Positions 19,943 to 47,285 of a stretch of 64,000 nt of DNA are shown in pieces. Below the pieces are notes generated by a model that worked only from the letters and a program-made list of their open reading frames with translations, did no database searches and had not been told where the DNA came from. The stretch covers positions 1 through 64,000 of the IMG/VR virus record IMGVR_UViG_3300025536_000010. The stretch is one strand, 5' to 3'. The translations under genes and the position numbers were made by a program. The number at the start of each line of letters is the position of its first letter. Within the stretch, counting starts at the first letter, position 1.

Positions 19943-20305
19943 ATGAAAGTGCTGTGCGTGTGCGAGCGGGGCAACAGTCGCTCCGTGTGCATGACCTGGC
20001 TGCTCAAGGATCACTACGGCGTGGAGGCGCTCGCCTGCGGTATCACGGCCATCACCGCGGACACCTGGCGATTGCTGTACAGTTGGGCGGACAAGGTCAT
20101 CCTCATGCACGCTCCGCTCCGCAGGCACATTCCAGGCGGCGACCCGGAGTTGAAAATGGTCGTCTGCGATGTCGGGGCCGACGTGTACTGGGAGCCGCCG
20201 CACGCCGATCTAACCGATCAGTGTCGAAGTTTCATTGAGAGCCGCCTGGGCCTGGCCCGCGGCCGGTTTCTGGGGGGTAAAGCGCCGTGTGGCAGAACTT
20301 CCTGA
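19943..20305 (+). CDS. Low-molecular-weight protein tyrosine phosphatase-like protein
   Basis: KVLCVCERGNSRS (C-x5-R P-loop), WADKVILM. Confidence 0.75.
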   Translation: MKVLCVCERGNSRSVCMTWLLKDHYGVEALACGITAITADTWRLLYSWADKVILMHAPLRRHIPGGDPELKMVVCDVGADVYWEPPHADLTDQCRSFIESRLGLARGRFLGGKAPCGRTS

Positions 20306-20859
20306 ACAACCTGTGGGCCTGGTTGGGCGCTGGCAAACCTGCACCGCCGCCGCCCAGGCCGCCAACCACGCCGGAACCGCCACCGCTCAATCCTGGCCAG
20401 GGCTTCGACGTGGAATTGCTGGACGCGCACAACCAGGCACGCAAGACCGCTGGGTTGCAGGCCCTGACTCTGCATGTGCAGCTGGACGCCGCCGCCCAGG
20501 CCCACGCGGACTGGATGGCCCGCAACCGCGACATGGATCACAATGAGACGCCGGGCACGCCGAGCTACTACGGCGTCGAGTTCGACGACCGCATTCGCAA
20601 AGCGGGCTACAACCCGCGCTCGGGCGGCGAGAACATTGCAGCCGGGCAACGCTCCGCGCAGCAGGTGTTCACCGCCTGGATGAACTCCTCGGGGCACCGC
20701 CGGAACATCCTCAACACGGTGTACTGGCACTGCGGCTTCGGGGCAGCCCGGGACCAGTACGGGAATCTCTACTGGTGCGCTGTTTTTGCCTCGCCTGTGC
20801 ATCGTGCCAGGGTGCAAGCAACCTACCACCTGCCGCGGGCGTTGGTCCGGCGGGGGTAA
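20287..20859 (+). CDS. CAP/SCP domain protein
   Basis: LLDAHNQAR..AGL, AAAQAHA, GENIAAGQ, AWMNSSGHRRNILN, YWCAVFA. Confidence 0.9.
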   Translation: MWQNFLNNLWAWLGAGKPAPPPPRPPTTPEPPPLNPGQGFDVELLDAHNQARKTAGLQALTLHVQLDAAAQAHADWMARNRDMDHNETPGTPSYYGVEFDDRIRKAGYNPRSGGENIAAGQRSAQQVFTAWMNSSGHRRNILNTVYWHCGFGAARDQYGNLYWCAVFASPVHRARVQATYHLPRALVRRG

Positions 20860-21008
20860 GCGGGAGGACGCGCCGATGCGTCTACCAAGCCACGGAGGGC
20901 AGAGCCCGGTACGAGGCCGGTGCTCATGTGGTACGGAGATCGTCAACCTGGGCAGCAGGCGGGGCTGGTGTCCCACCTGCTGCCGGGTCCATACAGGGGA
21001 TGGAACCC

Positions 21009-21461
21009 ATGACTCGCGTGATGACACCGATAGTGAAGGAGAAGTTGTGGGGGGTGACGAGGCCGGTTGACATCAGCCCCACGCACGAACTGCACCATGC
21101 CACGATCAAGGCGGGCGGGTTCAGCAGCCAGCACTGTCACCACCGGAAGTTTAACGGCTTCTATGTCGTTTCCGGCACGTTGCTGGTACACTTCTATCGA
21201 CGTAAGGGCGACGCAACCCCTTACGACACTGGACGGGCAGAAGCTGGCAGCAGCGTCATTGCCGTCTGGGACGAATGGCACCGCTTCGAGGCGGTGACCG
21301 ACGTAGAGTTGATTGAGTGGTATTTCAACGACCACGTCGACCCCACCGACATCGAGCGTTACGACGAGGGGGGTCTGACGCCGCCCTCAGAGGACGCAAC
21401 ACAGCCATGTCCAACCTCTTCGACGTCACCGAGCAAACCAAGCAAATCGCCGAGTTCGTGA
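21009..21461 (+). CDS. Cupin-domain protein (sugar isomerase-like)
   Basis: KLWG, SSQHCHHRKFNGFYVVSGTL, EWHRFEA. Confidence 0.7.
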   Translation: MTRVMTPIVKEKLWGVTRPVDISPTHELHHATIKAGGFSSQHCHHRKFNGFYVVSGTLLVHFYRRKGDATPYDTGRAEAGSSVIAVWDEWHRFEAVTDVELIEWYFNDHVDPTDIERYDEGGLTPPSEDATQPCPTSSTSPSKPSKSPSS

Positions 21462-22854: not shown

Positions 22855-23505
22855 ATGATCCGGGACGTTGTGGAGAAAGTGAGCGAGCTTCGAGACAAGC
22901 CGTGGTTGATCCTGGGCAAAGGTCCAAGCCTGGATCTCCGCGGCTGTTTCGACCTCGACGATTACCATGTCTTCACGCTCAATCACGCCTGCAAGGTCCA
23001 CCGGGCTACAGCAGCCCATTTCACGGACCTGGAGGCCCTCCACGATTGCTGGGACGACTTGATCGTGGTGCAGGGAGTGTCGCTTCCCTATGTACCGAGC
23101 CTGGTGATGCCGTGGGTGCCACACCGGGACATGGGACCAGGACACTTCAACCTTTCGGAACTTATCCAGGAAGGGGTGGAACCACGCCTGCGGTTGCTCT
23201 CGGATATTGATCGGCTGTGGTCGTATAACTCGACCCGGGTGCCCACTAGCCGGTGGCATAAGAGCCTGACGCCGGTGCGGGTCCGCTACTTTTCGGCGGT
23301 GGCAGCTTTCAATATCCTGGGCCTGGCTGGCTGTAAGCGCGTGTACAGCTTGGGCGTCGACGGCGGCGTCAAGTACGCCAAGGGTTTCGACCCGCGCCAC
23401 TGTCTGGCGAACGGACGGACGAGCTTCGACATACAGTTCAAAGAGATCACGGCGACGCTGGAGCGCCATCGCATGACTTGGACCAACCTGGCTGACAAAG
23501 TGTGA
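22855..23505 (+). CDS. MptE-like / GT42-GT29-like Rossmann transferase
   Basis: WLILGKGPSL, FTLNHA, AGCKRVYSLGVDG. Confidence 0.7.
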   Translation: MIRDVVEKVSELRDKPWLILGKGPSLDLRGCFDLDDYHVFTLNHACKVHRATAAHFTDLEALHDCWDDLIVVQGVSLPYVPSLVMPWVPHRDMGPGHFNLSELIQEGVEPRLRLLSDIDRLWSYNSTRVPTSRWHKSLTPVRVRYFSAVAAFNILGLAGCKRVYSLGVDGGVKYAKGFDPRHCLANGRTSFDIQFKEITATLERHRMTWTNLADKV

Positions 23506-23513
23506 GGTGCTGT

Positions 23514-23738
23514 ATGAAGCTGCGTGCGAATGTCACCGTGGCTAACGGTAACACGATTACGACCGACTCTGTGGAGTCGGTGAGCGACCTGGCGGAGAAA
23601 CTGCGAGGCCAACCTGCCGAGGACGTGACGCTGGTGCTCACGTTCGATAAACTGAGCGAGGCCCTGGTCCTAGCCCGCGAACTGGCGAGCGGTTTGCCGG
23701 TGATCGCGGAGTGTTTTGCGCATAAACCGCCCGAATAA
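23514..23738 (+). CDS. Small hypothetical protein, paralog A
   Basis: MKLRANVTVANGNTITT..S..LAEKLRG..VTL...LPVIAECF. Confidence 0.65.
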   Translation: MKLRANVTVANGNTITTDSVESVSDLAEKLRGQPAEDVTLVLTFDKLSEALVLARELASGLPVIAECFAHKPPE

Positions 23739-23755
23739 CGAGGAGGCGTTCAAGG

Positions 23756-23968
23756 ATGAACATTCGCGCTGCTATAACCTTGCCCAACGGCAATGTCGTG
23801 CAGACTGGCAACTGCCAGTCCTGTGCGACCCTGGCGGAGCGCCTGCGCGGCTACGCAGCCGTCAAGGTCACGCTCCAGGTCGAGTTCGAGAGCCAGGAAG
23901 ACACTAAACAACTCCAGCACGCTATGCCCGTGCTGGCTGACTGTTTCGGCCCGCCCAAGGATCGCTAA
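23756..23968 (+). CDS. Small hypothetical protein, paralog B
   Basis: MNIRAAITLPNGNVVQT..S..LAERLRG..VTL...MPVLADCF. Confidence 0.65.
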   Translation: MNIRAAITLPNGNVVQTGNCQSCATLAERLRGYAAVKVTLQVEFESQEDTKQLQHAMPVLADCFGPPKDR

Positions 23969-23969
23969 C

Positions 23970-24263
23970 ATGCCACTGGAGATGATCCCGCGCACCGTGG
24001 AATACTACTACCTGCTACGGCACTTGGTCGCAGGCAGCGTGGTCAAAGCCAGGGATCGGCTCTGGACTGTCGAGCGCTTCGACTGGTCCAAGGGCCGGTT
24101 CTCTGCGCCTGTCTGGGTGGCCGGCTACACGCCACAGGGTAAGCTGGAACGCTTGGTCGTCCGCCTGCCGGAGATCACCGATGTCATGGTGCCGGTCGAC
24201 CACCAGATCCCCGGCGGCCAGATTGACCCCTGCTTTATTGACCAGGTGCCTCCGCATGGCTAA
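23970..24263 (+). CDS. Hypothetical protein
   Basis: Starts 1 nt after previous stop. Confidence 0.55.
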   Translation: MPLEMIPRTVEYYYLLRHLVAGSVVKARDRLWTVERFDWSKGRFSAPVWVAGYTPQGKLERLVVRLPEITDVMVPVDHQIPGGQIDPCFIDQVPPHG

Positions 24264-24306
24264 GATCGCCCGGCGATGTTACCATAGCGATATGGAGGCA
24301 AGGACC

Positions 24307-24744
24307 ATGACTGAGCAAGAACAAGAGATCGCGCGACTGCGGCAGTGGGTGGCCGATTTGCAGAGCGGCATGTACGTCAACTGCGTCTATTGTGGGCACA
24401 ACTACGGCCCCAAGGACAAGGTGCCCTGCACGATGGCGGATGCGCTCAAGCAGCACGTCGAGCAGTGCCCCGAACACCCCCTGAGCAAGCTGCGGGCGGC
24501 GACCATGCAGGTGCTGCGCGACGTGGGCGGCTTCATTGCAGCAGCTGATAAGCTCTACCTGTGGGACAAGAAGTTCCCGCGCGGCTTGATGTTGCAGATG
24601 GGGGAGTCCGGGCGCAAGTGCCGTGAGTTCTTGGGTCCGCACCACCTGGCGGACCTGACCAACGACCCGACCGTAGCCGCGGTTATCCGCAAGGCCCTGG
24701 CCCCGGTCGACAACGCTGCCGAGATCGAGGAACTGCTGCGGTAG
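24307..24744 (+). CDS. Phage protein with Cys/His Zn-binding motif
   Basis: LQSGMYVNCVYCGHNYGP...HVEQCPEHP; RBS GGAGG; upstream TG-T-TACCAT at 24277-24285. Confidence 0.7.
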   Translation: MTEQEQEIARLRQWVADLQSGMYVNCVYCGHNYGPKDKVPCTMADALKQHVEQCPEHPLSKLRAATMQVLRDVGGFIAAADKLYLWDKKFPRGLMLQMGESGRKCREFLGPHHLADLTNDPTVAAVIRKALAPVDNAAEIEELLR

Positions 24745-24745
24745 C

Positions 24746-24763
24746 CTAAAAGCCACTTTTGAG
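24746..24763 (+). repeat. Dispersed AAAAGCC-nn-TTTT motif copy
   Basis: CTAAAAGCCACTTTTGAG, intergenic. Confidence 0.7.
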
Positions 24764-24782
24764 AAGCTCCAGGGAGGGAACG

Positions 24783-25652
24783 ATGGCTGTACGGAACACC
24801 GCCGAGAAGATCAGGGTTTTCATCGGCACGGAGCCCAAGACCGAGATCGCTCGCCGGGTGCTGGAGTGCAGCATCATCCGCCGCACGGAGATGAAGGTGG
24901 ACTTCGTCCCCATGATCGGCAAGGACTGGGAGTACAGCACTCAGGGCATCCAGGTAGGGACCGGGTTTAGTCTGCGGCGCTGGATGATTCCGGCCTACTG
25001 CAACTGGACTGGCCGGGCGATCTACCTGGATGCCGACCAACTGGTGTTCGGGGACATCTGGGACTTGTGGACCAAACCAGAACAACTGGGCAAGCCGCAC
25101 CAGTCGACGTACTGCACCTACCAACCCGACAAGTTCAGCAAGGAGCCGTGGCCCCAGACGTCGGTCATGGTTATCAACTGTGACGCGGCCAAGCAGGAGT
25201 GGGGCTGGCAGCTTACCCAGGTGCTGGACTACCTGCGGAAGTCGCCCAGCCGGGAGGTCTACACCAACTTCATGCACTTGATCGCCGACAAGAAGTGGTG
25301 GACGACGCAACCGCCTGGGCAGATCGAGACGCCGTGGAATCATCTGTGCGCCTTCCAGCCCGGTAAGACGAAGCTCCTGCACTACACCAAGGAACCCGAA
25401 CAGCCCTGGTACAAACCCGACCATCCGCTGGCCGCTCAATGGAAACTCGAACTCTCTGTCGCCATCAGTGCTGGGTACGTCACGGAAGACATGCTCAATG
25501 CCGCCCTGGCCAGGTGGGACGTCAAGGAAGACTGGCGACCGACCAACGGCTTGCACCCCGACTACGACCGCTTCCGCCCCAGCGTCAGCGCAAGCAAGAA
25601 CGGTAACATCCTGGCCAAACGTAAGAAGCCAGCAACTCAGGAGAAAGCATGA
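24783..25652 (+). CDS. Glycosyltransferase, GT-A (GT8-like)
   Basis: RVFIG..SI, TGFSLRRWMIP, AIYLDADQL (DxD), TSVMVINC, LLHYT. Confidence 0.8.
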   Translation: MAVRNTAEKIRVFIGTEPKTEIARRVLECSIIRRTEMKVDFVPMIGKDWEYSTQGIQVGTGFSLRRWMIPAYCNWTGRAIYLDADQLVFGDIWDLWTKPEQLGKPHQSTYCTYQPDKFSKEPWPQTSVMVINCDAAKQEWGWQLTQVLDYLRKSPSREVYTNFMHLIADKKWWTTQPPGQIETPWNHLCAFQPGKTKLLHYTKEPEQPWYKPDHPLAAQWKLELSVAISAGYVTEDMLNAALARWDVKEDWRPTNGLHPDYDRFRPSVSASKNGNILAKRKKPATQEKA

Positions 25653-26101
25653 GCAACAAGGACGACATCATCAGTCCGGTAACGGTTGGCGCGCCGGGCA
25701 TGACACCAGCCGAGATCCAGGAGGCCATGCGGCAGGCGATGGCTGGACCCGCAGACCAGGTTTGCTGTGTCATCGAACCCGGGCGCCTCGGGGCTGAGGG
25801 CAGCGACGGCAAGCCGCTCGAACGCCCTGGCCTGATGCTGGACGACCGGGCGTACGTCACGCCCATCGACCAGTCCAAGGGTGCGTACCTTGACGGCCGC
25901 TATCACCCGGAGCCGCAGTTCCTGCACACGGCACCGGCCACGTCGGCCATGACCAGGCTGGTCCGCCAGGCTCAGGTCGGCCTGTTCTTGGCACACCTGA
26001 AACTCGCGCGCTCGCACAGCAAGGCAGCCGTCGTCGAGTTGTGGCGGGCGGCGTGCAATACTGTGACCTTGTGGAAACTCTGGTTCAAAGGCCGACCATG
26101 A
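25649..26101 (+). CDS. Hypothetical protein
   Basis: ATGA overlap, RBS AGGAG. Confidence 0.6.
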   Translation: MSNKDDIISPVTVGAPGMTPAEIQEAMRQAMAGPADQVCCVIEPGRLGAEGSDGKPLERPGLMLDDRAYVTPIDQSKGAYLDGRYHPEPQFLHTAPATSAMTRLVRQAQVGLFLAHLKLARSHSKAAVVELWRAACNTVTLWKLWFKGRP

Positions 26102-26619
26102 TTATCTGCCCCCAAGAACATCACCTGCATGGCCCCGACACCCACTGCGGGGAGATCGGCTGCACCTGCACCTGCCTGCTGTGTGTCCGCCGCCGGGCCT
26201 TCTGGGACGAGGCGGCCAAAGACCACTACAAGGTCGTCGGTGGACCGTGCGACGGCGTCCACACCTGGAAGTCCACGTTCCCTGGCCTCCAGGAGGGTGG
26301 TGTGGTCTGCTGTACCGTGCCTGGGTCCAGCACCAAGCGCCCGGGGCGCTATCGCCGCGAGGGGAACAAGCTGATCTACGTCGGCTCCGAGAACGTGGTG
26401 CTGTTCGAGGGTGGGCCGCTGCATGGCAGCAACTACCCGGTCAAGCACCTGACGATCCCGGAGAACGGCTTGCTGCTGGTGCCGGCTGACCGGGGTACGG
26501 TGATGCGTTACCGTCTGGAGGCTGGCAAGCTGCACTACGTCGACACCGTGCCGGAGGCCGTGACGACTGAGCCGGAGATGCCTTTCCTGGGCGAGGGGCC
26601 TGGCCTGGAGATCCGCTAA
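26098..26619 (+). CDS. Hypothetical Cys-rich protein
   Basis: ATGA overlap; internal repeat VVGGPCDG / FEGGPLHG. Confidence 0.6.
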   Translation: MIICPQEHHLHGPDTHCGEIGCTCTCLLCVRRRAFWDEAAKDHYKVVGGPCDGVHTWKSTFPGLQEGGVVCCTVPGSSTKRPGRYRREGNKLIYVGSENVVLFEGGPLHGSNYPVKHLTIPENGLLLVPADRGTVMRYRLEAGKLHYVDTVPEAVTTEPEMPFLGEGPGLEIR

Positions 26620-26630
26620 GGAGGCGCACG

Positions 26631-27665
26631 GTGAAGGTCGGCATATTCAACACGAAAGAGACGCCGCGTGCCCGCTATATCATGGACTGCCTAGCCGAGG
26701 GTATGCGGGCCAACGGGGACGAGTGCGTCTGGATCGAGAACCGCAAACACCTGGGGACGCTCCAGCACGTCGACGTCACCGCCCAGATGTGCATGGTCAA
26801 CCAGCACCGCAGCGGCGACCCTATCAACCTCTTCCGCGTGGAGGCATGGCAGGAGGCTCGGCGTTTGGGTCTGCGGACCCTAGTGCTGGATACCGGCTTC
26901 GTCAGCAACCAGTACGACTACATCGCCAAGCAGAAACGCAACCCGGTCGTGCCGCGCTTTGACCTGGGCGACGTCAAGACATTCTCGGTGGCCGAGCGCA
27001 CCGTCTACTACGAGATAGCGTACGACGGTATCAAGGGTTTCGGCGATCACTGCACGGCTGGGGCTTTGCCGCTCGACCGCTGGAAGCTGCTCAACCGTAG
27101 CGTCAAACCCTGGCGGTTACGCGGTAGTAAGATCCTGTTTATGACGCAGCCTCTGCATGGCCAATCGAGCCAGGGTACGGACGTCTTCGCCTGGTACGGC
27201 AAGAAGTTCCGCGAGATCCGCGCGTTCACCCAGATGCCGGTCGTGGTACGCATCCACCCGCGCGTCGACAAGTTCCAGACCTCGAAGCGGCACACCGACA
27301 AGTACCGTGCGCGTATCAAAGAAGTCATCAACCATAAGGACGTGCGCTGGTCTGAAAAAATCTGTCTGGAGGAAGACCTGCTCGTCGCCCGTTTCGCTGT
27401 GGCCTACTCGACCAGCGCCGCCGTGGCTGCCGTGCTGGAGGGTGTGCCCGTTTGCGTCGGCAGCCCGGGCTGCATGGCCTGGCCGATGGCTCAGCCAGAC
27501 CTGAAAACGGCGTCCACCAGGCTCTGCACGATCCAGCGCAGCCCGTGGTTGGCTGCCCTGGCGTACAGCCAGTGGAACTGTGCGGAACTGCGGAACGGAT
27601 CGGCGTGGTCCCACTACCGCAGTCACGCGACATCCCCAAGGAAGGAGAGCGTTCATGTCGTCTGA
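26631..27665 (+). CDS. GT-B capsule-synthesis (KpsS/KpsC-like) glycosyltransferase, paralog 1
   Basis: VVRIHP, AVAYSTSAAVAAVLEGVPV, WLAALAYSQWNCAELRNG. Confidence 0.65.
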   Translation: MKVGIFNTKETPRARYIMDCLAEGMRANGDECVWIENRKHLGTLQHVDVTAQMCMVNQHRSGDPINLFRVEAWQEARRLGLRTLVLDTGFVSNQYDYIAKQKRNPVVPRFDLGDVKTFSVAERTVYYEIAYDGIKGFGDHCTAGALPLDRWKLLNRSVKPWRLRGSKILFMTQPLHGQSSQGTDVFAWYGKKFREIRAFTQMPVVVRIHPRVDKFQTSKRHTDKYRARIKEVINHKDVRWSEKICLEEDLLVARFAVAYSTSAAVAAVLEGVPVCVGSPGCMAWPMAQPDLKTASTRLCTIQRSPWLAALAYSQWNCAELRNGSAWSHYRSHATSPRKESVHVV

Positions 27666-28473
27666 GATCCTGTTCGTGACGTCCTACACCAAGGAACTGT
27701 ACGCGGCCTCGGGTCGCCGGCTCCTGGAGTCGTTCCGCGTGGTCAAGCAGCCCGGCGCCATGCTGGCTTGCACCGAGGGCTTTAAGCGCCCTGAGAAAGC
27801 GTTCGAGGGCAAGCCCTACATCTACCACAACCTGGACGACGATCCCTTTTTGGGTCGCTGGCTGATGGAAAACAAGGACGTCATCCCCGATCACCTGGGC
27901 GGCGACACGAAAATGTGCGACTGCCCGGGGGCCAACGAGCGGCACGGCCGCGAGCACAAGACGGGCTGCCACTGGCACTGGATGAACCGTAACGCCAGCC
28001 GCTGGTTTCGCAAAGTGGCCTCGCTGCGCCAGGGTGTGAGGGTGGCCGACGCCCTGGGCACGCCTTGGATGGTCTGGCTGGACGCCGACGACCACTTCAT
28101 CCGGCCGCTGCCTCTGGACTATCTCAAGGAGAAGCTCAGGGACGTGGCCCTGTTCCACTTCCGCGGCCACCGCGAGGCCACCGAGTCTGGCATCCTGGGC
28201 ATCCAGCTGGCTCAGGGCGGTCGGGAGTTCGTCGCGGCTCTGTGCGAGCGCTACACCAGCAAGGACTACCGCAAATACGAGCGCTGGGACGACGGCTACC
28301 AGATCAGCCGCCTGGTGCTGGAAGGCAAGGTCAAGGCCCGCGACCTAGTCCACCCCACGAAGTACAAGAGCGGCGACCTCCGCACGGAGGACGTCATCCC
28401 GACCACGGACATCAAGAAGTTCCTGGTTCACGACAAAGGTCGCCACGGTCAGTACCTGGGTCTGATGAAGTAA
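27655..28473 (+). CDS. Nucleotide-diphospho-sugar transferase (GT-A)
   Basis: FVTSY, RWFRKVASL, VWLDAD (DxD), ESGILG, HDKG. Confidence 0.7.
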   Translation: MSSEILFVTSYTKELYAASGRRLLESFRVVKQPGAMLACTEGFKRPEKAFEGKPYIYHNLDDDPFLGRWLMENKDVIPDHLGGDTKMCDCPGANERHGREHKTGCHWHWMNRNASRWFRKVASLRQGVRVADALGTPWMVWLDADDHFIRPLPLDYLKEKLRDVALFHFRGHREATESGILGIQLAQGGREFVAALCERYTSKDYRKYERWDDGYQISRLVLEGKVKARDLVHPTKYKSGDLRTEDVIPTTDIKKFLVHDKGRHGQYLGLMK

Positions 28474-28486
28474 CAAGGAGGTTTCA

Positions 28487-29707
28487 ATGCAGCAGCTGCA
28501 AACGCTCAAGGACGGCGACCGTAAGGCCCTCGTCCCGCTCAACGACAAACACTTTGGCGGCAAGGACAAGAAGGGTCGACCGCTCTGGAAGGACTATCAG
28601 TACGACCGGCTGGTGGCCGCTTACCACCACATCACCGACTACTCGGTGGCCGTAGACGTGGGCGCCCACGTCGGCCTGATCTCGCAGCGCCTGGCCGAGC
28701 GCTTCGGCACCGTCTACGCTTTTGAGCCCGACCCGCAGAACTTCTTGTGTCTGTGGCACAACACCCGGTTTCTAACGCCGGTGCTGCGCGTGCCGATGGC
28801 CCTGGGCGACAAGACGGCAACCGGCGGCATCGACCGCGGCAAGGGCGAGAACAGCGGCGACGTGTGTATCGACCCCAAAGGCACCGGCGTCGACATCATG
28901 GCCCTGGACGATTACGACCTGCCAGACCTGGGCCTGCTCAAGATCGACGTGCAGGGCTACGAACACCTGGTCCTGGAAGGTGCCCGTAAGCTCATCCAGG
29001 CGTTCGCCCCGGTGGTCATCGTGGAGTGCGAGGAGCCTGGCAAGCTGCGCCGGGACTACTCCAAAGGCAAAGACCTGGTCGGGGCTTTCTTCGCCCAGGA
29101 GCACTGGGATTACCGCCTGGTTGCCAAGGTCGGCCACGACCGCATCTACGCCCCCGGCCCTAACGGTGCGCGGCCCTACACCAAGTACGCCATCCGGGGC
29201 GACTACCACTGGCAGCAGAACATCCCTGGCAAGGTGATGGGGAAGTGCATCAAAGAAGTCACCGACTACATCAACGCCCAAAAGCACGAGGCCGTGCTGG
29301 ACGTCGGCTGCGGTGACGGGCACTGCACCAGCATGCTCAAAAACGCTTTCGGCACCGACGACAACGGCACGGCCCTGGCCCTGGCCCGTCGTCATGGTAT
29401 CCCTTGTGCGCAGCTGTCGGCGTACCGCTTGCAGTATCTGGGTCGCCAGTTCGGCGGCGTCTGCATGCTCGACGTCCTCGAACACCTGCCGCGGCAGGAG
29501 CAAGCCCTGCGGATCGCCGCCCAGGTCGGCGACAACCTCTACATTCTGAACCCGGACCCGGTCGGCACGCACTGGCACGCCAGCGAGTTTACCGACGAGG
29601 CCCTGCTCAAGTTCGTCACCGCCAACGGCTGGCAGGTGAAGTACCACAAGCGCTACGAGATGTCCGACGACAACAAAAAGACCTTCGTTCATCTGGTCAA
29701 GCCATGA
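28487..29707 (+). CDS. Tandem methyltransferase: FkbM-family plus class I SAM domain
   Basis: VDVGAHVG..AFEPDP..LKIDVQGYE (FkbM); second domain LDVGCGDG..DVLEHL. Confidence 0.85.
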   Translation: MQQLQTLKDGDRKALVPLNDKHFGGKDKKGRPLWKDYQYDRLVAAYHHITDYSVAVDVGAHVGLISQRLAERFGTVYAFEPDPQNFLCLWHNTRFLTPVLRVPMALGDKTATGGIDRGKGENSGDVCIDPKGTGVDIMALDDYDLPDLGLLKIDVQGYEHLVLEGARKLIQAFAPVVIVECEEPGKLRRDYSKGKDLVGAFFAQEHWDYRLVAKVGHDRIYAPGPNGARPYTKYAIRGDYHWQQNIPGKVMGKCIKEVTDYINAQKHEAVLDVGCGDGHCTSMLKNAFGTDDNGTALALARRHGIPCAQLSAYRLQYLGRQFGGVCMLDVLEHLPRQEQALRIAAQVGDNLYILNPDPVGTHWHASEFTDEALLKFVTANGWQVKYHKRYEMSDDNKKTFVHLVKP

Positions 29708-30615
29708 AACTGCGTGTTGCTTTCTACGCCCTCACGGGGCACAGGTTCGACAAGGGCATCTCCGGGGCGTTTGCCTCGGGGGTGCTGGCTTGCGGGGACG
29801 ACTACATCCAGCCTCGGCTGGAGGAGTACACAGGCACGCCCGACCCGAACGTGGACGTCGCGGTGTTCCTGGGCGTCAAGAACAACACCAGGGACGTGTT
29901 TCGCAGTTACCTGGCGGCGGGTAAGGCGGCAGTGATCTGGGACAAGGGTTACACCCGCATCCGTGGCGGGCCGCTCAAGACGCTCTACTGGCGGGTGTCG
30001 GTCAACGCCTTCCAGCCGCACCACTACCTGTTCAACACGCCGCACGACTCGGAGCGCTGGGAGCGCCTGGGCTTGAAAATCAAGCCGATGAAGCCCGAGC
30101 GGAAGACGGGCCAGGGGCGCATCCTCTACTGCGGCGGCTCGCAGAAGTATTGCGACTGGCACGATCTGGGAGACGCCACCAAGTACGCCGAGTGGGTGCT
30201 GCGTAAGGCTCGCAAGTACACAACGCGGCCTTTGGCCTACCGCCCCAAGCCAGGCTGGGAGGAGGCCACGCCGATCCCCGGTGTCACCTACGCCACTGGC
30301 TTGTTCGGCACTTTCGGCAAGGAGCTACCTGGCACCTACCAGGTGGTCGTCTTCGGCTCGAACGCCGCGTTCGAGGCGCTCATCAACGGCGTACCCGCTA
30401 CGGTGCTTGGTGACGGTATCGCCCGCTCGTTGGCCAACACCAGTCTGCGCGACCTGGAACGGCCGCGGCTGCCAAGCCAAGACGAGGTTTACAAGCTGGC
30501 CAGCGCGGCGGCATACTGTCAGTGGACGATGGAGGAGATGGCCTCGGGGGTTGCCTGGGAGCACGTCAGGACGACGGTGCTACAGCACAAGGAGGGAGCG
30601 TATGGGCCAGGTTAA
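29704..30615 (+). CDS. GT-B capsule-synthesis-like glycosyltransferase, paralog 2
   Basis: LAYRPKP, VVVFGSNAAFEALINGVP, AAYCQWTMEEMASG; similar to the 26631 protein. Confidence 0.65.
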   Translation: MKLRVAFYALTGHRFDKGISGAFASGVLACGDDYIQPRLEEYTGTPDPNVDVAVFLGVKNNTRDVFRSYLAAGKAAVIWDKGYTRIRGGPLKTLYWRVSVNAFQPHHYLFNTPHDSERWERLGLKIKPMKPERKTGQGRILYCGGSQKYCDWHDLGDATKYAEWVLRKARKYTTRPLAYRPKPGWEEATPIPGVTYATGLFGTFGKELPGTYQVVVFGSNAAFEALINGVPATVLGDGIARSLANTSLRDLERPRLPSQDEVYKLASAAAYCQWTMEEMASGVAWEHVRTTVLQHKEGAYGPG

Positions 30616-31156
30616 ACGGTTTTTGTTCGTGGCCGCTGGTCCGACGGCGCAGGAGGCCAAACGCTTCCTGCGCTATGGCCCGCTGGTCACCATGAACTGG
30701 GCGCTGGAGTTGTTCGACAAGGTCGACATCGCCTGTTTCGGCTCGCCGAATAAGGCACGCACGACCCGCGAGCACTGGCACCGAGCCAAGCTGCTCGTAC
30801 CGCTGTTCCCCCAAGGCAAAGCCGACAAACTCGGCATGCCGGCCGAGAAAACAACCTGCTTCCATATTCCCGAGCCGCCGCGGGAACCGGAGAAGAACTT
30901 CCGTTTTCTCCGCGAGTACATTCGGGCCGGTAACGTCCTGGGCCGCGCGACCAAGGTGCTGCACTTCATGAGGAAGGCTGGCTACGGCGAGGTCTGGTTG
31001 TTCGGCCACGACGGCGGCACGTTCTACCACCCGGCGTTAGGCCAGGAGCGCCTGACGCGCCGGCACGACAAAGACCGTTTTGTCGTCGAAGAGACGCTCA
31101 AGCATCTGGGGTTCGCTTACAAGTTCTGGCCCTCGATACCTGACGGCTGGCTCTAG
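30602..31156 (+). CDS. MptE-like / GT42-like transferase, paralog 2
   Basis: LFVAAGPT, VTMNWA, GYGEVWLFGHDG. Confidence 0.55.
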   Translation: MGQVKRFLFVAAGPTAQEAKRFLRYGPLVTMNWALELFDKVDIACFGSPNKARTTREHWHRAKLLVPLFPQGKADKLGMPAEKTTCFHIPEPPREPEKNFRFLREYIRAGNVLGRATKVLHFMRKAGYGEVWLFGHDGGTFYHPALGQERLTRRHDKDRFVVEETLKHLGFAYKFWPSIPDGWL

Positions 31157-31168
31157 CACGGAGGACAA

Positions 31169-31864
31169 ATGAGCAACCGCATCTTTATCGGGTGGGACAG
31201 CCGGTTCCCCGAGCCGGCTTTGGTGCTGGAGTACAGCCTGCGGCGGCGCTCCAGCATACCGCTCGACATCCGCTTCTTGGATGCCCGGCACTTGGCGGAC
31301 TGCCACGGCTTCCGCCTGCCGGCGGACAAGTTAGCCAGCACCGAGTTCACCTACAGCCGCTTCCTGGTGCCCTGGCTGTGCGGTTATGAGGGCAAGGCCC
31401 TGTTCCTGGACAACGACATGGTCTGCCTGGGCGACGTCGCCGAGTTGTTCGCCCTGCCCATGACCGTGCCGGATGGTGTCAGTTCGCGGCTGCTGGCCCT
31501 CCGCGTGGTCAAGCACGACCACCAGCCGGTCGACGGTTCGGTGAAGATGTACGGGGCCGTGCAGACGGCCTACCCGCGCAAAAACTGGTCCAGTCTGATG
31601 CTCATGGACTGCGACCAGCTGCGCTGCTGGACCAAGGAGGTTGTCGAGGCTGGCAACGGCGCCCGGCTGCACCGCTTTGCCGACCTGGCTGACTCCCAGA
31701 TCGGCGACGTCCACCCGTCCTGGAACTCCCTGGACACGCTGGACGCCGGCACCAAACTCATCCACTGGACCAGCGGCGGCCCCTGGTACGAGCAGTATCG
31801 GGACTGCCCGCACGCTGACCTCTGGTTCAAGACCCGCGAGCTTATGCAACGAGAGCGTCGATGA
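31169..31864 (+). CDS. Glycosyltransferase, GT-A (GT8-like, phage type)
   Basis: RIFIGWDSR, STEFTYSRFLVP, ALFLDNDM, YPRKNWSSLML, LIHWTSGGPW. Confidence 0.85.
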   Translation: MSNRIFIGWDSRFPEPALVLEYSLRRRSSIPLDIRFLDARHLADCHGFRLPADKLASTEFTYSRFLVPWLCGYEGKALFLDNDMVCLGDVAELFALPMTVPDGVSSRLLALRVVKHDHQPVDGSVKMYGAVQTAYPRKNWSSLMLMDCDQLRCWTKEVVEAGNGARLHRFADLADSQIGDVHPSWNSLDTLDAGTKLIHWTSGGPWYEQYRDCPHADLWFKTRELMQRERR

Positions 31865-32502
31865 AGCGCTTCATCAACCTGTTCCACGCCCTGGACAAGC
31901 TCGGCGGTCAGGGCGGCACGCACCTGGGCCTCCTGGAAGTCGGCACTGGCGAGGGCGTCCGGGCAGCCCAGCTGCTGAACTACTGGCTGGCTGCTGGTCA
32001 GCGTTCGGCCAGCTACCGTGGTTTCGATCTCTGGGAACAGCTGACGCCGGACGTAGCCAGGGAAGACGGTGTCAAGATGCCGGAGCGGTTGCCGCAGCGC
32101 CAGGAAGTCCTGCGGCGACTGTCGCGCACTGGAGCAGGCGTGACCCTCTACCAAGGCAACACCCGCGAAACCCTGCCGGCTTTCGCGGCCGAGTGCCAGA
32201 AGTCTGGCATGCTGTTCAACCTGATCTTCATCGACGGCGGCGCCAGCTTTGACACTATCACCTCGGACTGGAAAGCAGTCAGCAAACTGGTGCGCCCCGA
32301 CACCATCGTTCTCTTCGACGGCTACTACGACAACCGGGACGACCTTGGCTGCTGGTCGGTGATCCAGTACCTTGCCCTGGGTAAGGCGTTCCGCGTATTC
32401 AAGCTGGACCCGGTCGACTACATCCACGACTCGGGTTTGGAGGTCCGCATGGTCTGGGTGGAGAGGGCGGCCCATGCGCTTCTGGAAACCAAAAACCGTT
32501 GA
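31861..32502 (+). CDS. Class I SAM-dependent methyltransferase
   Basis: LEVGTGEG, GFDLWE, LIFIDGG, VLFDGY. Confidence 0.8.
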   Translation: MKRFINLFHALDKLGGQGGTHLGLLEVGTGEGVRAAQLLNYWLAAGQRSASYRGFDLWEQLTPDVAREDGVKMPERLPQRQEVLRRLSRTGAGVTLYQGNTRETLPAFAAECQKSGMLFNLIFIDGGASFDTITSDWKAVSKLVRPDTIVLFDGYYDNRDDLGCWSVIQYLALGKAFRVFKLDPVDYIHDSGLEVRMVWVERAAHALLETKNR

Positions 32503-33103
32503 AGGTGCCCCGCGCGTCGGTATCGGCGTGGCTTCGTTCCTGAACGGGGACACCCGCCGCCAGGCGGCTTTGCGCTCGCTGGTGGCGTCCTTCCAGGCCC
32601 AGACCTGGGACAACTGGAAGATGCTCATTTACCACGATGGACCGCTCGACCGGAACATCCGCCTGGAGTGGGACCAGCAGGTCAAAGACAACCGCGTCGA
32701 CCTGATCGAGACGGCCGAGCGCAAACAGAAGTTTGGCCACCCCCACCGGCAGAAAGCCGTCGATACCCTCTGCGCGACCTGCCAGTGGGTCATGCTCACC
32801 AACGACGACAACTGGTACGCCCCGGTCTTCCTGGAGTGGTTACTGGCCGCCGGCACCAAGAAGGGCGCCAAGTTCGTCTACTGCGACATGGTTCACTCGC
32901 ACAAGCTGTGGAAATACCTGCCGACGCAGCCGCGCTACCGGCATCTGGACCTGGGTGGTTTCCTGGTCCATTCCTCTCTTGCGAAAAAGCACCCCTTCGA
33001 CAAAACTGCTTTCAACGCGGACGGCGACTGGATCAACCGTTTAGCGGTTGCTGCCGGCAGCCGTATCGAGAAGGTGCCACATGTGCTTTTCGTTCACAAC
33101 TAG
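32474..33103 (+). CDS. Glycosyltransferase family 2
   Basis: QAQTWDNWKMLIYHDG, LTNDDNWY (DxD-like), FVYCD, DGDW. Confidence 0.8.
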   Translation: MRFWKPKTVEGAPRVGIGVASFLNGDTRRQAALRSLVASFQAQTWDNWKMLIYHDGPLDRNIRLEWDQQVKDNRVDLIETAERKQKFGHPHRQKAVDTLCATCQWVMLTNDDNWYAPVFLEWLLAAGTKKGAKFVYCDMVHSHKLWKYLPTQPRYRHLDLGGFLVHSSLAKKHPFDKTAFNADGDWINRLAVAAGSRIEKVPHVLFVHN

Positions 33104-33111
33104 GAGCTACC

Positions 33112-33834
33112 ATGCGTGAAGTGACCCTGCACCGCTGCGGCGCTGGCATTGACGAACTGTTGAGCGTCGGGGCCAGTGAAGAGAACACCAATCACTACGT
33201 CATCGGCGTCAACCTCCGACCTTTGGGCACCATTCAGGAGATGCCGCAGACCTGGCTCTTGCGGTTCCAACAAGGCCCGCTGGGCGACGATAAGACCAAC
33301 GTCAACGGCCTCACCCTGGAGGCGGTCATCGCGGTCTGCATCGACCGGCTCACTCGTTTGAACGGCGAAGTACCTTGCCCGGAGAACATCGTTGCCCTGT
33401 GTCGTCTGGAAGACGCCATGCGGGCACTGCACGCACGCACCCGCGCCCGTAACAACCAAGGAGTTGAAGGCACCATGAGCAAGCACGCGAGCGGAGCCCC
33501 CAGTGAAGTCGGCGCGAAGGCGACACCGGGCGACACCGGCCCCCAGGGCCACCAAGGGGAACAGGGCGAGCCTGGCCTGCGGGTCAGCGTTCGGCGCAGT
33601 ACCACGGCAACCCAGCTGGTCCTGCGGCATAAGGACAGCGAGCGCGTCCTGGGCGTCGACTACGTCAAAGACAACTGGAAAGCCTGGGGCGAGATCGAGA
33701 GCGTCGTGCGGCACTATCACCCACGGCTCACCAGCGACGAGTGGGCGGTGCTGGAGGGTCTGGCGACAAAGGTGCCGTCGAAGAACGGCCTGGCCGAACT
33801 CAAGTCGGCCCTGTTGCAGGCCGGCAAGCTCTAA
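33112..33834 (+). CDS. tad1: Tad1-like anti-defence signal sponge with collagen-like linker and C-terminal extension
   Basis: FQQGP...VNGLTLEAVIAVCIDRL...CPENIVALCRLEDAMRALHARTRARNNQGVEGT matches the Tad1 family pattern; followed by G-X-Y run GDTGPQGHQGEQGEPG. Confidence 0.75.
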   Translation: MREVTLHRCGAGIDELLSVGASEENTNHYVIGVNLRPLGTIQEMPQTWLLRFQQGPLGDDKTNVNGLTLEAVIAVCIDRLTRLNGEVPCPENIVALCRLEDAMRALHARTRARNNQGVEGTMSKHASGAPSEVGAKATPGDTGPQGHQGEQGEPGLRVSVRRSTTATQLVLRHKDSERVLGVDYVKDNWKAWGEIESVVRHYHPRLTSDEWAVLEGLATKVPSKNGLAELKSALLQAGKL

Positions 33835-47284: not shown

Positions 47285-47285
47285 A

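What the first reader, a model, noticed from the sequence alone, without database searches (positions are those of the whole stretch)
22855..33103. Ten-kb glycan-building island with internally duplicated enzyme types
Seen: 2 MptE/GT42-like, 2 GT8-like, 2 KpsS-like GT-B, 1 further GT-A and 1 GT2, plus 3 methyltransferase domains, mostly coupled by overlapping start/stop codons. With genes at 1210, 2031, 42498, 47286, 48381, 49763 and 50357, the window holds about 17 glycan-related genes. No flippase, polymerase or nucleotide-sugar synthesis genes are visible. Established: giant eukaryotic viruses encode their own capsid glycosylation, and large phages often carry GT clusters of unclear target. 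Inference: a virus-encoded pathway for a complex methylated and sulfated glycan on virion proteins, or for DNA hypermodification.
Basis: partly seen in the sequence, partly recalled or inferred. Interest (0 to 1): 0.68.

Follow-up and report, generated by a model that had tools for sequence, protein, structure and literature searches.

The report
Jumbo-phage multi-enzyme glycan-building gene island
A 10-kb stretch of an uncultured 235-kb bacteriophage genome really does encode eight sugar-adding enzymes and three methyltransferase domains, built around a five-gene set shared by many uncultured phages, but what the glycan is attached to is still unknown (phage particle proteins are the best guess).

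Summary
Window 22855-33103 holds 16 same-strand genes. Ten are glycan enzymes: two Maf/MptE/GT42-fold GTs (g1, g13), two GT8-like (g6, g14), two KpsC/WbbB-fold GT-B (g9, g12), one probable GT-A (g10), one GT2 (g16), a two-domain methyltransferase (g11) and an MT_24 methyltransferase (g15). Most were invisible to Pfam, NCBIfam and PHROGs and needed folds or profiles.

The contig is a complete 234,886-bp phage, not a host EPS locus. A core cassette, g1-g6-(g10)-g15-g16, recurs in order in most of 19 viral contigs. Genes g9 and g11-g14 are an add-on shared with one 214-kb relative, which also carries nucleotide-sugar genes there.

All enzymes look soluble. The genome has no initiating phosphoglycosyl transferase, flippase or polymerase. 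It also lacks ThyA-type hydroxymethylase, TET/JBP dioxygenase and C5 DNA methylase, so DNA glycosylation is disfavoured.

In other phages, g1 homologues sit beside CMP-sugar synthetases, are fused to the GT8-like enzyme, or lie between terminase and portal genes.

Best reading: stepwise cytoplasmic assembly of a methylated, probably sulfated glycan that may contain an ulosonic acid, on virion proteins (about 0.45). Remodelling of host envelope glycolipid is the main rival. The g9 and g12 families lack the conserved QXXXD aspartate, so they are not bona fide Kdo transferases.

The parts
22855..23505 (+). g1, 216 aa: Maf/MptE/GT42-fold glycosyltransferase and first gene of the conserved core cassette. 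Family-invariant G-K-G-P near the N-terminus and G-x-D-G-G near residue 167.
   Evidence: No Pfam, NCBIfam or PHROG hit. 162 homologues, none with a Pfam domain. AF2 pLDDT 93.5. VIA Z 13.8 to Maf 5mu5, 13.5 to MptE HPPK, about 11 to Cst-I/II.
23514..23968 (+). g2 (23514-23738) and g3 (23756-23968): tandem paralogous small proteins of about 70 aa, function unknown.
   Evidence: 38% identity to each other, E 2e-14. No family hit.
23970..24744 (+). g4 (23970-24263) and g5 (24256-24744, Cys-rich): unknown small proteins. A g4 homologue follows g1 in L001.
24783..25652 (+). g6, 289 aa: GT8-like GT-A with an invariant D-x-D. Core cassette member.
   Evidence: PF01501 E 2e-3, 18.2 bits against a 24.3-bit cut-off. 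Homologues at 47-67% identity directly after g1 in most viral loci. Family profile finds only GT8-type PDB chains, weakly.
25649..26619 (+). g7 (25649-26101) and g8 (26098-26619, Cys-rich N-terminus): unknown, ATGA-coupled, absent from related loci.
26631..27665 (+). g9, 344 aa: GT-B with the modified beta-Kdo-transferase fold. Has an invariant H-P-R motif but no QXXXD aspartate.
   Evidence: 8 homologues. AF2 pLDDT 81.8. Foldseek E 3.5e-7 to KpsC. VIA Z 14.1 KpsC-N, 13.4 WbbB, 11.9 KrkA. Motifs.
27655..28473 (+). g10, 272 aa: probable GT-A (nucleotide-diphospho-sugar transferase-like) with an invariant W-x-D-x-D. Frequent cassette member.
   Evidence: Atlas nearest named clusters are PF03407/PF01501, score 0.97. 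The same fold is fused to MptE-like and MT_24 domains in 578-761 aa phage proteins. Profile tests blank.
28487..29707 (+). g11, 406 aa: two-domain methyltransferase (FkbM-type plus class I SAM-dependent).
   Evidence: PF05050 E 1.4e-12 and PF08241 E 1.2e-9. 66% identical orthologue in L036.
29704..30615 (+). g12, 303 aa: second GT-B of the same kind, paralogue of g9. Family motifs are G-S-S-Q-K-Y-C-x and Y-R-P-K-P.
   Evidence: 35% identity over 77 aa to g9. Atlas: a PF05159-bearing cluster, all viral, and the fold fused to GT8 in 546-aa phage proteins. 65 homologues. Weak GT-B C-terminal match to PDB UGTs, E 0.03.
30602..31156 (+). g13, 184 aa: second Maf/MptE/GT42-fold glycosyltransferase.
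   Evidence: hhalign of the g1 family against the g13 family: probability 98.6%, E 8e-16, 175 columns. Small family of 17 representatives.
31169..31864 (+). g14, 231 aa: second GT8-like GT-A with D-x-D.
   Evidence: PF01501 E 5e-5, 23.4 bits against a 24.3-bit cut-off. Paralogue of g6, E 4e-12. 65% identical orthologue in L036.
31861..32502 (+). g15, 213 aa: Methyltransf_24 (class I O-methyltransferase type). Core cassette member.
   Evidence: PF13578 E 2e-11. Homologues in 11 viral loci and in L040.
32474..33103 (+). g16, 209 aa: GT2 glycosyltransferase. Last gene of the core cassette.
   Evidence: PF00535 at 24.4 bits, above the 23.3-bit cut-off. Homologues in 12 viral loci.
20775..21461 (+). 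Cupin gene (conserved part from about 21010): candidate nucleotide-sugar epimerase. It sits beside the cassette in many relatives.
   Evidence: Cupin_2 E 7e-6. Family profile's best PDB hit is the Cap5F cupin domain, E 7e-5. Neighbour of the cassette in seven viral loci, with a homologue upstream of g1 in L040; Cupin_2-domain genes also lie near g1 homologues in L036, L038 and L041.
20287..20859 (+). CAP/SCP-domain protein, recurrently next to g1 homologues.
   Evidence: PF00188 E 1.9e-21. Seen next to g1 homologues.
1210..3077 (+). GT2 (1210-2034) and GT1/GT4 (2031-3077). In relatives these two are interleaved with g15 and g16, so they belong to the same gene set.
   Evidence: PF00535 E 1.6e-12 and PF00534 E 3e-9. 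Synteny in L006, L009, L011.
47061..51277 (+). GT2-like (47061-48353), sulfotransferase (48363-49178), unverified nucleotidyltransferase-like ORF (49730-50317) and GT2 (50357-51277). The two GT2 genes and the sulfotransferase follow the cassette, after one caspase gene, in L005 and L013.
   Evidence: Sulfotransfer_3 at 26.7 bits against a 27-bit cut-off. Synteny. 49730 is unsupported beyond IspD E 4.5e-3.
33112..33834 (+). g17: short collagen-like, tail-fibre-like protein immediately downstream. Not conserved next to the cassette in relatives.
   Evidence: phrog_2428 E 1.7e-17 and collagen-like tail-fibre PHROGs..

Best explanation
The island is a phage-encoded, cytoplasmic, stepwise glycan-assembly pathway.

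A conserved core starts and extends the glycan. It consists of a Maf/GT42-fold transferase (g1), a GT8-like transferase (g6), a probable GT-A (g10), an O-methyltransferase (g15) and a GT2 (g16).

This phage lineage has added a second Maf-fold enzyme (g13), a second GT8-like enzyme (g14), two GT-B enzymes with the beta-Kdo-transferase fold (g9, g12) and a two-domain methyltransferase (g11). Further GT2 and GT4 enzymes and a sulfotransferase lie elsewhere in the window.

The enzymes draw on host nucleotide sugars and host PAPS (3'-phosphoadenosine-5'-phosphosulfate, the sulfate donor). The Maf-fold enzymes probably use a CMP-activated ulosonic acid such as Kdo or a nonulosonic acid. Sugars are added one at a time directly to an acceptor, without a lipid carrier or export step.

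The most likely acceptor is one or more virion proteins (capsid, tail or fibre). That would give the particle a methylated, acidic, possibly sulfated glycan coat.

Shown: the enzyme folds and families, the paralogy, the conserved cassette, the viral origin, and the absence of export genes and of DNA-base-activating genes. Inferred: donor sugars, order of action and the acceptor.
For: Viral origin: the record is a virus record that CheckV rates 100% complete, with RNAP beta-like genes and collagen-like tail fibres. The g10 and g12 families are 88-100% viral in the Atlas.

Cassette: the ordered core appears in most of 19 IMG/VR loci, whose GC ranges from 29 to 63% where measured.

Functional coupling: g1-like and GT8-like are one ORF in L017. 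The g10 fold is fused to MptE-like and MT_24 domains, and the g12 fold is fused to GT8, in other phages.

Donor hint: a CTP_transf_3 cytidylyltransferase (E 1.9e-21) is start/stop-coupled to the g1 homologue in L019. A related ORF follows the cassette's GT4 in L011 (BLASTP E 3e-7 to the L019 enzyme); its N-terminus looks KdsB-like, which is my own reading of the motif. Kdo_hydroxy hits (weak or faint) occur in L039 and L040.

Sugar-pathway nature: NTP_transferase and an NDP-sugar epimerase/dehydratase lie inside the island of the 214-kb relative L036. DegT and Asn_synthase genes lie in L038 and L041.

No lipid-carrier route: no Bac_transf hit, no TM segment in any GT or MT, and no protein with six or more TM segments among the called + strand ORFs.

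Virion link: in the 20-kb contig L016 the GT8, GT8-like and g1-like genes lie between the terminase large subunit and the P22-like portal gene. Maf, the best fold match, is a protein (flagellin) glycosyltransferase. The best viral fold match of g1 is a protein of an algal giant virus, where no LPS exists.
Against: No experiment or proteomic data link the enzymes to virion proteins.

In this genome and its jumbo relatives the cassette lies among non-structural genes (tubulin, caspase, CAP, RNR, with ThyX nearby), not in a head or tail module. The head-module position rests on one small contig.

No major capsid protein was identified, so no candidate acceptor tail could be examined.

GT8, GT4, Kdo-type and KdoO-like enzymes are equally typical of LPS-core assembly.

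The Kdo or ulosonic-acid donor is only contextual. This genome has no cytidylyltransferase. The g9 and g12 families lack the conserved QXXXD aspartate.
Confidence: 0.45

Rival explanations
1. The enzymes remodel a host envelope glycoconjugate during infection, such as the LPS inner or outer core or a Kdo-linked glycolipid. They would act at the cytoplasmic face of the membrane and rely on the host's own export (MsbA/Lpt or the capsule ABC system). The result could be receptor masking, superinfection exclusion, or protection of progeny from adsorbing to debris.
For: The family mix is that of LPS-core and capsule-linker assembly: GT8-like, GT4, GT2, the KpsC/WbbB fold, a KdsB-like ORF, KdoO-like genes in relatives, and a sulfotransferase. 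A phage flippase would not be needed, which fits its absence. The cassette lies among non-structural genes in jumbo relatives.
Against: The enzymes have no membrane anchor or amphipathic tail signal. The g9 and g12 families lack the invariant QXXXD aspartate of Kdo transferases. The g1 fold also occurs in algal giant viruses. The cassette spans contigs of 29-63% GC, implying varied hosts. In L016 the genes sit between terminase and portal. Best fold match Maf acts on a protein.
Confidence: 0.25
2. The island glycosylates phage DNA, as a sugar hypermodification of a hydroxymethylated base that protects against restriction.
For: Phage GT-A and GT-B enzymes related to LPS enzymes can put mono- to trisaccharides on 5hmC (bioRxiv 10.1101/2023.12.21.572611). 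ThyX lies next to GT2 and the g1 homologue in L019 and a few kb upstream in L018. This genome has a 422-aa ThyX with an N-terminal extension.
Against: The whole genome has no ThyA-type hydroxymethylase, no TET/JBP dioxygenase and no C5 DNA methylase. These are the known routes to the acceptor base, and they normally cluster with the GTs. ThyX argues for ordinary thymine; that inference is mine. At least 12 transferases, three methyltransferase domains and a sulfotransferase far exceed any known DNA glycan. Maf- and Kdo-transferase-type folds were not the classes that paper describes.
Confidence: 0.07
3. The acceptor is something else: a host protein such as flagellin or pilin, a non-virion phage protein, or a small molecule or free oligosaccharide.
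For: Maf enzymes glycosylate flagellin. A pilin-like N_methyl/SBP_bac_10 gene lies directly upstream of the g1 homologue in L038. A CAP-domain protein is conserved next to g1.
Against: No specific acceptor is indicated. A core cassette kept across very different phages argues for a phage-encoded, conserved acceptor.
Confidence: 0.15
4. The region is a bacterial EPS or LPS locus, either host DNA or a mis-binned contig.
For: The gene families are those of bacterial polysaccharide loci.
Against: It is a single 234,886-bp virus record rated 100% complete. GC is uniform across the window and nearly all called genes are on one strand. The genome carries phage RNAP beta-like genes, tail fibres and RNR. 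There is no initiating transferase, flippase or polymerase. The homologues lie on viral contigs.
Confidence: 0.01

Closest known systems
Mycobacteriophage virion O-glycosylation (Freeman et al. 2023, Cell Host Microbe; cited in PMC12619734; the paper itself was not held)
   Same: Phage-encoded soluble glycosyltransferases are thought to decorate capsid and tail proteins in the cytoplasm without a lipid carrier. GT genes can sit in the structural module, as in L016 here.
   Different: To my knowledge those phages have a few GTs next to structural genes. Here there are at least 12 transferases plus three methyltransferase domains and a sulfotransferase, with Maf-fold and Kdo-transferase-fold enzymes, and in the jumbo genomes they lie among non-structural genes. 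No glycan has been observed here.
Giant-virus virion and fibril glycosylation clusters (chlorovirus capsid glycans; Megavirinae clusters, PMC10117803)
   Same: These are virus-encoded multi-GT pathways with methyltransferases, multidomain GT-GT-MT style enzymes and clade-specific variation. DUF115/MptE-like and GT8 proteins occur in giant viruses, and the best viral fold match of g1 is from Pyramimonas orientalis virus.
   Different: The host here is prokaryotic (RBS-coupled, overlapping genes). There are no nucleotide-sugar synthesis genes in this genome. Sequence relationship is at the fold level only.
Bacterial flagellin glycosylation islands (Maf glycosyltransferases, CMP-pseudaminic or legionaminic acid; PDB 5mu5)
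   Same: Best fold match of g1 (Z 13.8). Association with a cytidylyltransferase, a DegT aminotransferase, an Asn-synthase-like amidotransferase and methyltransferases in related phage loci.
   Different: g1 and g13 are 184-216 aa and cover only the catalytic core of the roughly 630-aa Maf. There is no PF01973 hit and no flagellin gene or NeuB-type synthase here.
Retaining beta-Kdo transferases KpsC, KpsS, WbbB and KrkA (GT107/GT99)
   Same: g9 shares their unusual modified GT-B fold better than any other GT-B. g9 keeps an HP motif.
   Different: The invariant QXXXD aspartate nucleophile is absent from the g9 family and variable in the g12 family. The HP motif is replaced by RP in g12. There is no membrane anchor and no PF05159 hit.
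Phage DNA sugar-hypermodification gene clusters (T4 glucosyltransferases; 5mYOX- or ThyS-associated GTs, bioRxiv 10.1101/2023.12.21.572611)
   Same: Phage GT-A and GT-B enzymes derived from LPS-type enzymes, sometimes with secondary GTs.
   Different: The enzymes that make the acceptor base are absent from the whole genome. Enzyme number and types differ.

Membership tests
Maf / MptE-like (PF01973) / GT42-type sialyltransferase fold (g1, g13) | Three-dimensional fold of the catalytic domain | tested here: met
   g1 model (pLDDT 93.5) against Maf 5mu5: Z 13.8, 175 aa, rmsd 3.1. MptE HPPK Z 13.5. Cst-I/II Z 10-11. g13 is linked by hhalign at 98.6%.
Maf / MptE-like (PF01973) / GT42-type sialyltransferase fold (g1, g13) | Match to the Pfam family model PF01973 | tested here: not met
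   No Pfam hit for g1 or for the ORF containing g13 at E <= 0.01. Only other, second MptE-like genes in related loci carry faint or weak PF01973 hits.
Maf / MptE-like (PF01973) / GT42-type sialyltransferase fold (g1, g13) | Use of a CMP-activated ulosonic acid donor | not testable with these tools
   Context only: CTP_transf_3 is coupled to the g1 homologue in L019, and a related, KdsB-like ORF lies in L011. This genome has none.
Retaining beta-Kdo glycosyltransferases GT99/GT107 (g9, g12) | Modified GT-B fold shared by KpsC, WbbB and KrkA | tested here: met
   g9: the top 15 VIA rows are all Kdo transferases, Z 11.7-14.1 with rmsd about 4 over about 250 aa. Generic GT-B scores Z about 10 with rmsd 6.5-8. 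g12 was not modelled here; the Atlas puts it by a PF05159-bearing cluster.
Retaining beta-Kdo glycosyltransferases GT99/GT107 (g9, g12) | Invariant QXXXD motif with the aspartate nucleophile (PMC10148158) | tested here: not met
   In the g9 family the residue four after the conserved Gln of H-G-Q-S-S-Q is Val or Ile. In the g12 family the corresponding position is D, N, T, E, Q, S and others across 29 sequences. The register comes from sequence alignment, not a structural superposition.
Retaining beta-Kdo glycosyltransferases GT99/GT107 (g9, g12) | HP motif shared with CMP-sialic-acid-dependent GTs | tested here: inconclusive
   g9 family: H-P-R is invariant in 8 of 8 sequences. g12 family: Y-R-P-K-P instead. 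Equivalence of position was not checked by superposition.
GT8 (PF01501) (g6, g14) | Pfam model at gathering score, plus a DxD motif | tested here: inconclusive
   18.2 and 23.4 bits against a 24.3-bit cut-off. DxD is invariant in the 12-sequence alignment. The profile finds WbbM (E 0.0076), GlyE (0.017) and glycogenin (about 0.3) and no other fold class at the top.
GT2 (PF00535) (g16) | Pfam model at gathering score | tested here: met
   24.4 bits against a 23.3-bit cut-off. Found again by the six-frame genome search.
SAM-dependent methyltransferases (g11, g15) | Pfam models at gathering score | tested here: met
   g11: PF05050 at 48.5 bits (cut-off 22.7) and PF08241 at 39.1 bits (cut-off 21.2). 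g15: PF13578 at 45.1 bits (cut-off 26.3). The substrate (sugar or other) was not tested.
GT-A nucleotide-diphospho-sugar transferase (g10) | Recognisable GT-A homology | tested here: inconclusive
   Atlas features score 0.97 to clusters carrying PF03407/PF01501, and W-x-D-x-D is invariant. There is no PDB or Pfam profile hit, and hhalign against the GT8-like family aligns only the DxD motif.
DNA sugar-hypermodification cluster | An enzyme that creates the hydroxymethyl-pyrimidine acceptor (ThyA-type hydroxymethylase, or C5-MTase plus TET/JBP 5mYOX) | tested here: not met
   No PF00303, PF12851 or PF00145 match in the 234,886-bp genome, with the control genomes giving the expected hits. Only ThyX is present.
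Lipid-carrier polysaccharide locus (Wzx/Wzy or ABC type) | Initiating phosphoglycosyl transferase, flippase, polymerase or permease | tested here: not met
   No PF02397 hit. No protein with six or more TM segments among the called + strand ORFs of the genome, and no TM segment in any GT. PF00953 and the Wzx/Wzy models were not searched directly.
Mycobacteriophage-type virion glycosylation | GT genes inside the virion structural module | tested here: inconclusive
   Not so in this genome or its jumbo relatives. It is so in L016, where the genes lie between terminase and portal. Acceptor tails on capsid or tail proteins were not tested because the capsid gene was not identified.

The most novel reading that the evidence does not exclude
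A previously unannotated glycosylation system is widespread in uncultured tailed phages. Its core is a minimal Maf-fold transferase, a GT8-like enzyme, a GT-A, an O-methyltransferase and a GT2. It would coat virions with an acidic, methylated and sometimes sulfated glycan containing an ulosonic acid, a phage counterpart of the giant-virus glycan coat. In this lineage it includes a new GT-B family that took the beta-Kdo-transferase fold but dropped the aspartate nucleophile, implying a different chemistry or donor.
Probability: 0.3. Interest if true: 0.75.

Novelty: new variant of a known kind. Interest (0 to 1): 0.55.

Why it matters
Virion glycosylation has been shown in only a few mycobacteriophages and in giant eukaryotic viruses. 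A conserved cassette of fold-level glycosyltransferases, missed by the family-model libraries scanned here (Pfam, NCBIfam and PHROGs for the island genes, PADLOC not run), across many uncultured phages would suggest the trait is far more common.

It gives a defined five-gene set that can be expressed and assayed. It also flags two enzyme families of biochemical interest: minimal 184-216-aa Maf-fold transferases, and Kdo-transferase-fold GT-B enzymes without the catalytic aspartate.

If the target is instead host LPS, it would be a rare case of large-scale envelope remodelling by a lytic jumbo phage.

Either way, it cautions against reading phage GT clusters as DNA-modification systems when the base-activating enzymes are missing.

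Tried and rejected
Searches that gave nothing useful:
- Megablast of the island against 50,697 phage records found no match.
- tblastn of g1 found nothing. g9 gave one weak hit, and g6 gave two weak hits (Pelagibacter phage Mosig and a spring metagenome phage). So no cultured phage carries the cassette in that collection.
- NCBIfam and PHROGs were blank for all the island GTs left open by Pfam (g1, g6, g9, g10, g12, g13).
- Sequence profiles of the g1, g9, g10 and g13 families against the PDB gave nothing significant.
- The 391-aa gene at 25-1200, often upstream of the cassette in relatives, stayed unexplained.
- A scan for Ser/Thr-rich tails and analysis of the collagen-like repeats gave no candidate acceptor. 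The repeats are G-x-Q.

Ideas rejected:
- The 'moraphage' lineage (PMC12619734) was considered as this clade and set aside. It is predicted to infect Bacteroidota and the paper gives no matching features.
- A host EPS locus was rejected (see the rival explanations).

- The Atlas fold library was unavailable.
As a result g10, g12, g13, g14 and g16 were not modelled, the major capsid gene was not identified and the host was not predicted.

Full report
**Setting.** The window is the first 64 kb of a single 234,886-bp contig held as a virus record. CheckV rates it 100% complete. GC is about 62% throughout the window, with no compositional break at the island. Nearly all real genes lie on the + strand, as judged by third-position GC. 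The genome encodes:
- a ribonucleotide reductase;
- a tubulin/FtsZ-like protein, a caspase-domain protein, a CAP-domain protein and a MYG1-family protein;
- two large RNA-polymerase-beta-like proteins and a 1306-aa collagen-like tail fibre;
- a DNA ligase and ThyX;
- no tRNA.

Its nearest cultured relatives, by the RNAP beta-like protein, are Salmonella phage Arash and some Vibrio phages at only about 30% identity. It is therefore an uncultured jumbo tailed phage, not a host polysaccharide locus and not a eukaryotic giant virus. Genes have GGAGG-type ribosome-binding sites and ATGA overlaps.

**Gene model.** A GC3 frame plot and start-codon inspection give 16 genes, g1 to g16, from 22855 to 33103. 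These are exactly the coordinates of the finding.

**Enzyme identities.** Pfam alone recognises only five of the genes:
- the two-domain methyltransferase g11 (FkbM plus Methyltransf_11);
- the Methyltransf_24 protein g15;
- the GT2 g16;
- g6 and g14, both just under threshold for GT8.

NCBIfam and PHROGs add nothing. The other assignments needed deeper tests.

- *g1.* It has 162 homologues without any Pfam domain. Its AlphaFold model (pLDDT 93.5) matches the Maf flagellin glycosyltransferase (Z 13.8), the archaeal MptE kinase (Z 13.5) and the GT42 sialyltransferases Cst-I and Cst-II (Z about 11).
- *g13.* This belongs to a small family that aligns with the g1 family at hhalign probability 98.6%, E 8e-16.
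- *g9.* It has only eight homologues. Its model (pLDDT 81.8) is nearest the retaining beta-Kdo transferases KpsC, WbbB and KrkA (Z 11.7-14.1, rmsd about 4 Å). Ordinary GT-B enzymes follow at Z about 10 with rmsd 6.5-8 Å.
- *g12.* It is a paralogue of g9. The Atlas places it among purely viral clusters, one of which carries Capsule_synth.
- *g10.* The Atlas places it next to viral clusters carrying Nucleotid_trans/GT8, and it has an invariant W-x-D-x-D motif. Profile tests stayed blank, so this is the weakest assignment.
- *g6 and g14.* They are paralogues (E 4e-12). Their joint profile finds only GT8-type chains in the PDB, weakly.

Six small genes (g2-g5, g7, g8) show no glycan-related signal. 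g2 and g3 are tandem paralogues.

**Membership limits.** Retaining beta-Kdo transferases are defined by an invariant QXXXD motif, whose aspartate is the nucleophile, and by an HP motif (PMC10148158).
- The g9 family keeps H-P-R but has Val or Ile four residues after its conserved Gln.
- The g12 family has a variable residue there (D, N, T, E, Q, S) and Y-R-P-K-P in place of HP.

These two families therefore share the fold but fail a defining feature. They should not be called Kdo transferases. Likewise, g1 and g13 share the Maf/GT42 fold but do not match PF01973.

**The rest of the window.** Pfam confirms a GT2 at 1210, a GT1/GT4 at 2031, a weak GT2 at 47061, a borderline sulfotransferase at 48363 and a GT2 at 50357. 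The ORFs at 42450 and 49730 could not be confirmed. A cupin at 20775-21461 best matches the cupin domain of the capsule enzyme Cap5F (E 7e-5). It is conserved beside the cassette in relatives.

**Comparative genomics.** A scan of IMG/VR with the g1 family gave 19 loci.
- Most carry, in the same order, homologues of g1, g6, often g10, g15 and g16. This is a conserved core cassette.
- In L005 and L013 the cassette is followed by homologues of the caspase gene (40071), the GT2 (47061), the sulfotransferase (48363) and the GT2 (50357).
- In L006, L009 and L011 the window's 1210 GT2 and 2031 GT4 are interleaved with g15 and g16. The window's scattered glycan genes are therefore one gene set that has been spread out in this genome.
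- g7-g9 and g11-g14 have no homologue in those 19 loci. However, g9, g10, g11, g12 and g14 recur at 45-66% identity in a 213,646-bp relative (L036). There an NTP_transferase and an NDP-sugar epimerase/dehydratase lie within the same island.
- The 'internal duplication' is old: g6 and g14 share 25% identity, and g1 and g13 are related at profile level only. It is a lineage-specific expansion, not a recent tandem copy.

**Clues to mechanism from other contexts.**
- In L017 the g1-like and GT8-like parts form one 489-aa ORF.
- The Atlas shows the g10 fold fused to MptE-like and Methyltransf_24 domains, and the g12 fold fused to GT8, in other phage proteins. These fusions argue that the enzymes act on one product.
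- In L019 (29% GC) the g1 homologue is start/stop-coupled to a CTP_transf_3 cytidylyltransferase (E 1.9e-21) and followed by an FkbM methyltransferase.
- In L011 an ORF with a KdsB-like N-terminus (my own reading of the motif) is related to that enzyme (E 3e-7) and follows the cassette's GT4.
- L039 and L040 carry faint or weak Kdo-hydroxylase hits. L038 and L041 carry DegT and asparagine-synthase-like genes.

Together with the Maf/GT42 fold, this points to a CMP-activated ulosonic acid as one donor. This genome has no cytidylyltransferase, NTP_transferase or epimerase of its own, so it would depend on host pools.

**Where does the glycan go?**
- No GT or methyltransferase has a transmembrane segment. 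The called + strand ORFs of the genome include no polytopic membrane protein and there is no Bac_transf match. A lipid-carrier and export route encoded by the phage is therefore excluded.
- The genome lacks a ThyA-type hydroxymethylase, a TET/JBP dioxygenase and a C5 DNA methylase. These make the acceptor base in all described DNA sugar-hypermodification clusters and usually sit beside the GTs. DNA is thus an unlikely target. One caveat is that ThyX lies next to the g1 homologue in L019 and a few kb upstream of it in L018.
- Several points favour virion proteins. In the small contig L016 the GT8, GT8-like and g1-like genes lie between the terminase large subunit and the portal gene. The best fold match of g1 is a protein glycosyltransferase. 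The g1 fold occurs in algal giant viruses, where LPS does not exist. The cassette spans phages of 29-63% GC.
- Against this, in the jumbo genomes the cassette lies among non-structural genes. The enzyme mix would also suit remodelling of the LPS core or a Kdo-linked glycolipid, using host export.

My estimates are: virion-protein glycosylation about 0.45, host-envelope remodelling about 0.25, another acceptor about 0.15, DNA about 0.07.

**Literature and novelty.** Full-text searches found no description of MptE-like or Maf-fold enzymes in phages, nor of such a cassette in jumbo phages. The nearest precedents are:
- mycobacteriophage virion glycosylation (cited in PMC12619734);
- giant-virus glycan clusters (PMC10117803);
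- phage DNA glycan clusters.

This is a new variant of a known kind, virus-encoded glycosylation. It is notable for its size, its conserved core, and two fold-level enzyme families that the family-model libraries scanned here (Pfam, NCBIfam, PHROGs) miss.

**Limits.**
- Start codons are inferred.
- g10 is weakly supported.
- Motif registers for g9 and g12 come from sequence alignment, not superposition.
- The capsid gene and the host were not identified.

Noticed in passing
window 3326-4603; G000 66967-70113 and 76486-80658: A tubulin/FtsZ-family protein (PF00091 E 7.7e-11) together with two large RNA-polymerase-beta-like proteins. This gene combination recalls nucleus-forming jumbo phages, but the closest cultured relatives share only about 30% identity (Salmonella phage Arash, Vibrio phages).
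   Followed up: partly
window 40071-40895: A caspase-domain protein (Peptidase_C14, E 6e-23). It follows the glycan cassette directly in L005 and L013, and lies about 1 kb downstream of it in L001.
   Followed up: partly
window 41333-42340: A full-length MYG1/UPF0160 family protein (E 6.6e-67), which is unusual in a phage.
   Followed up: no
window 20287-20859: A CAP/SCP (cysteine-rich secretory protein) domain protein. It recurs immediately beside g1 homologues in several unrelated contigs (L006, L009, L039, L040). Its role is unknown.
   Followed up: partly
window 57230-58453: A fusion of an InPase domain (E 2e-48), seen in giant DarB-like and virion proteins by PHROGs, with a HAD/PNKP-like phosphatase.
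   Followed up: no
window 11343-16139: A 1598-aa ORF with no Pfam or PHROG match. Parts of it are conserved in related jumbo contigs.
   Followed up: no
G000 142513-147151: A 1098-aa protein with collagen-like G-x-Q repeats, followed directly by the best-scoring GT2 of the genome (E 2e-18). This is a second possible fibre-plus-transferase pair.
   Followed up: partly
G000 94468-94950: A 160-aa ORF with an extreme Ser/Tyr/Pro low-complexity region.
   Followed up: no
G000 218153-219421: A ThyX of 422 aa, with the Thy1 domain only at residues 131-365. It therefore carries an unexplained N-terminal extension of about 130 aa. ThyX also lies next to the g1 homologue in L019 and near it in L018.
   Followed up: partly
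L017 9842-11311: A single 489-aa ORF that fuses a g1-like Maf-fold domain to a GT8-like domain.
   Followed up: partly
L038 8966-9997: A prepilin-type N_methyl/SBP_bac_10 protein directly upstream of a g1 homologue. To my knowledge this protein type is common in Planctomycetota, so it is a possible host hint for that contig.
   Followed up: no
G000 whole genome: ARAGORN found no tRNA gene in the 235-kb phage genome.
   Followed up: yes
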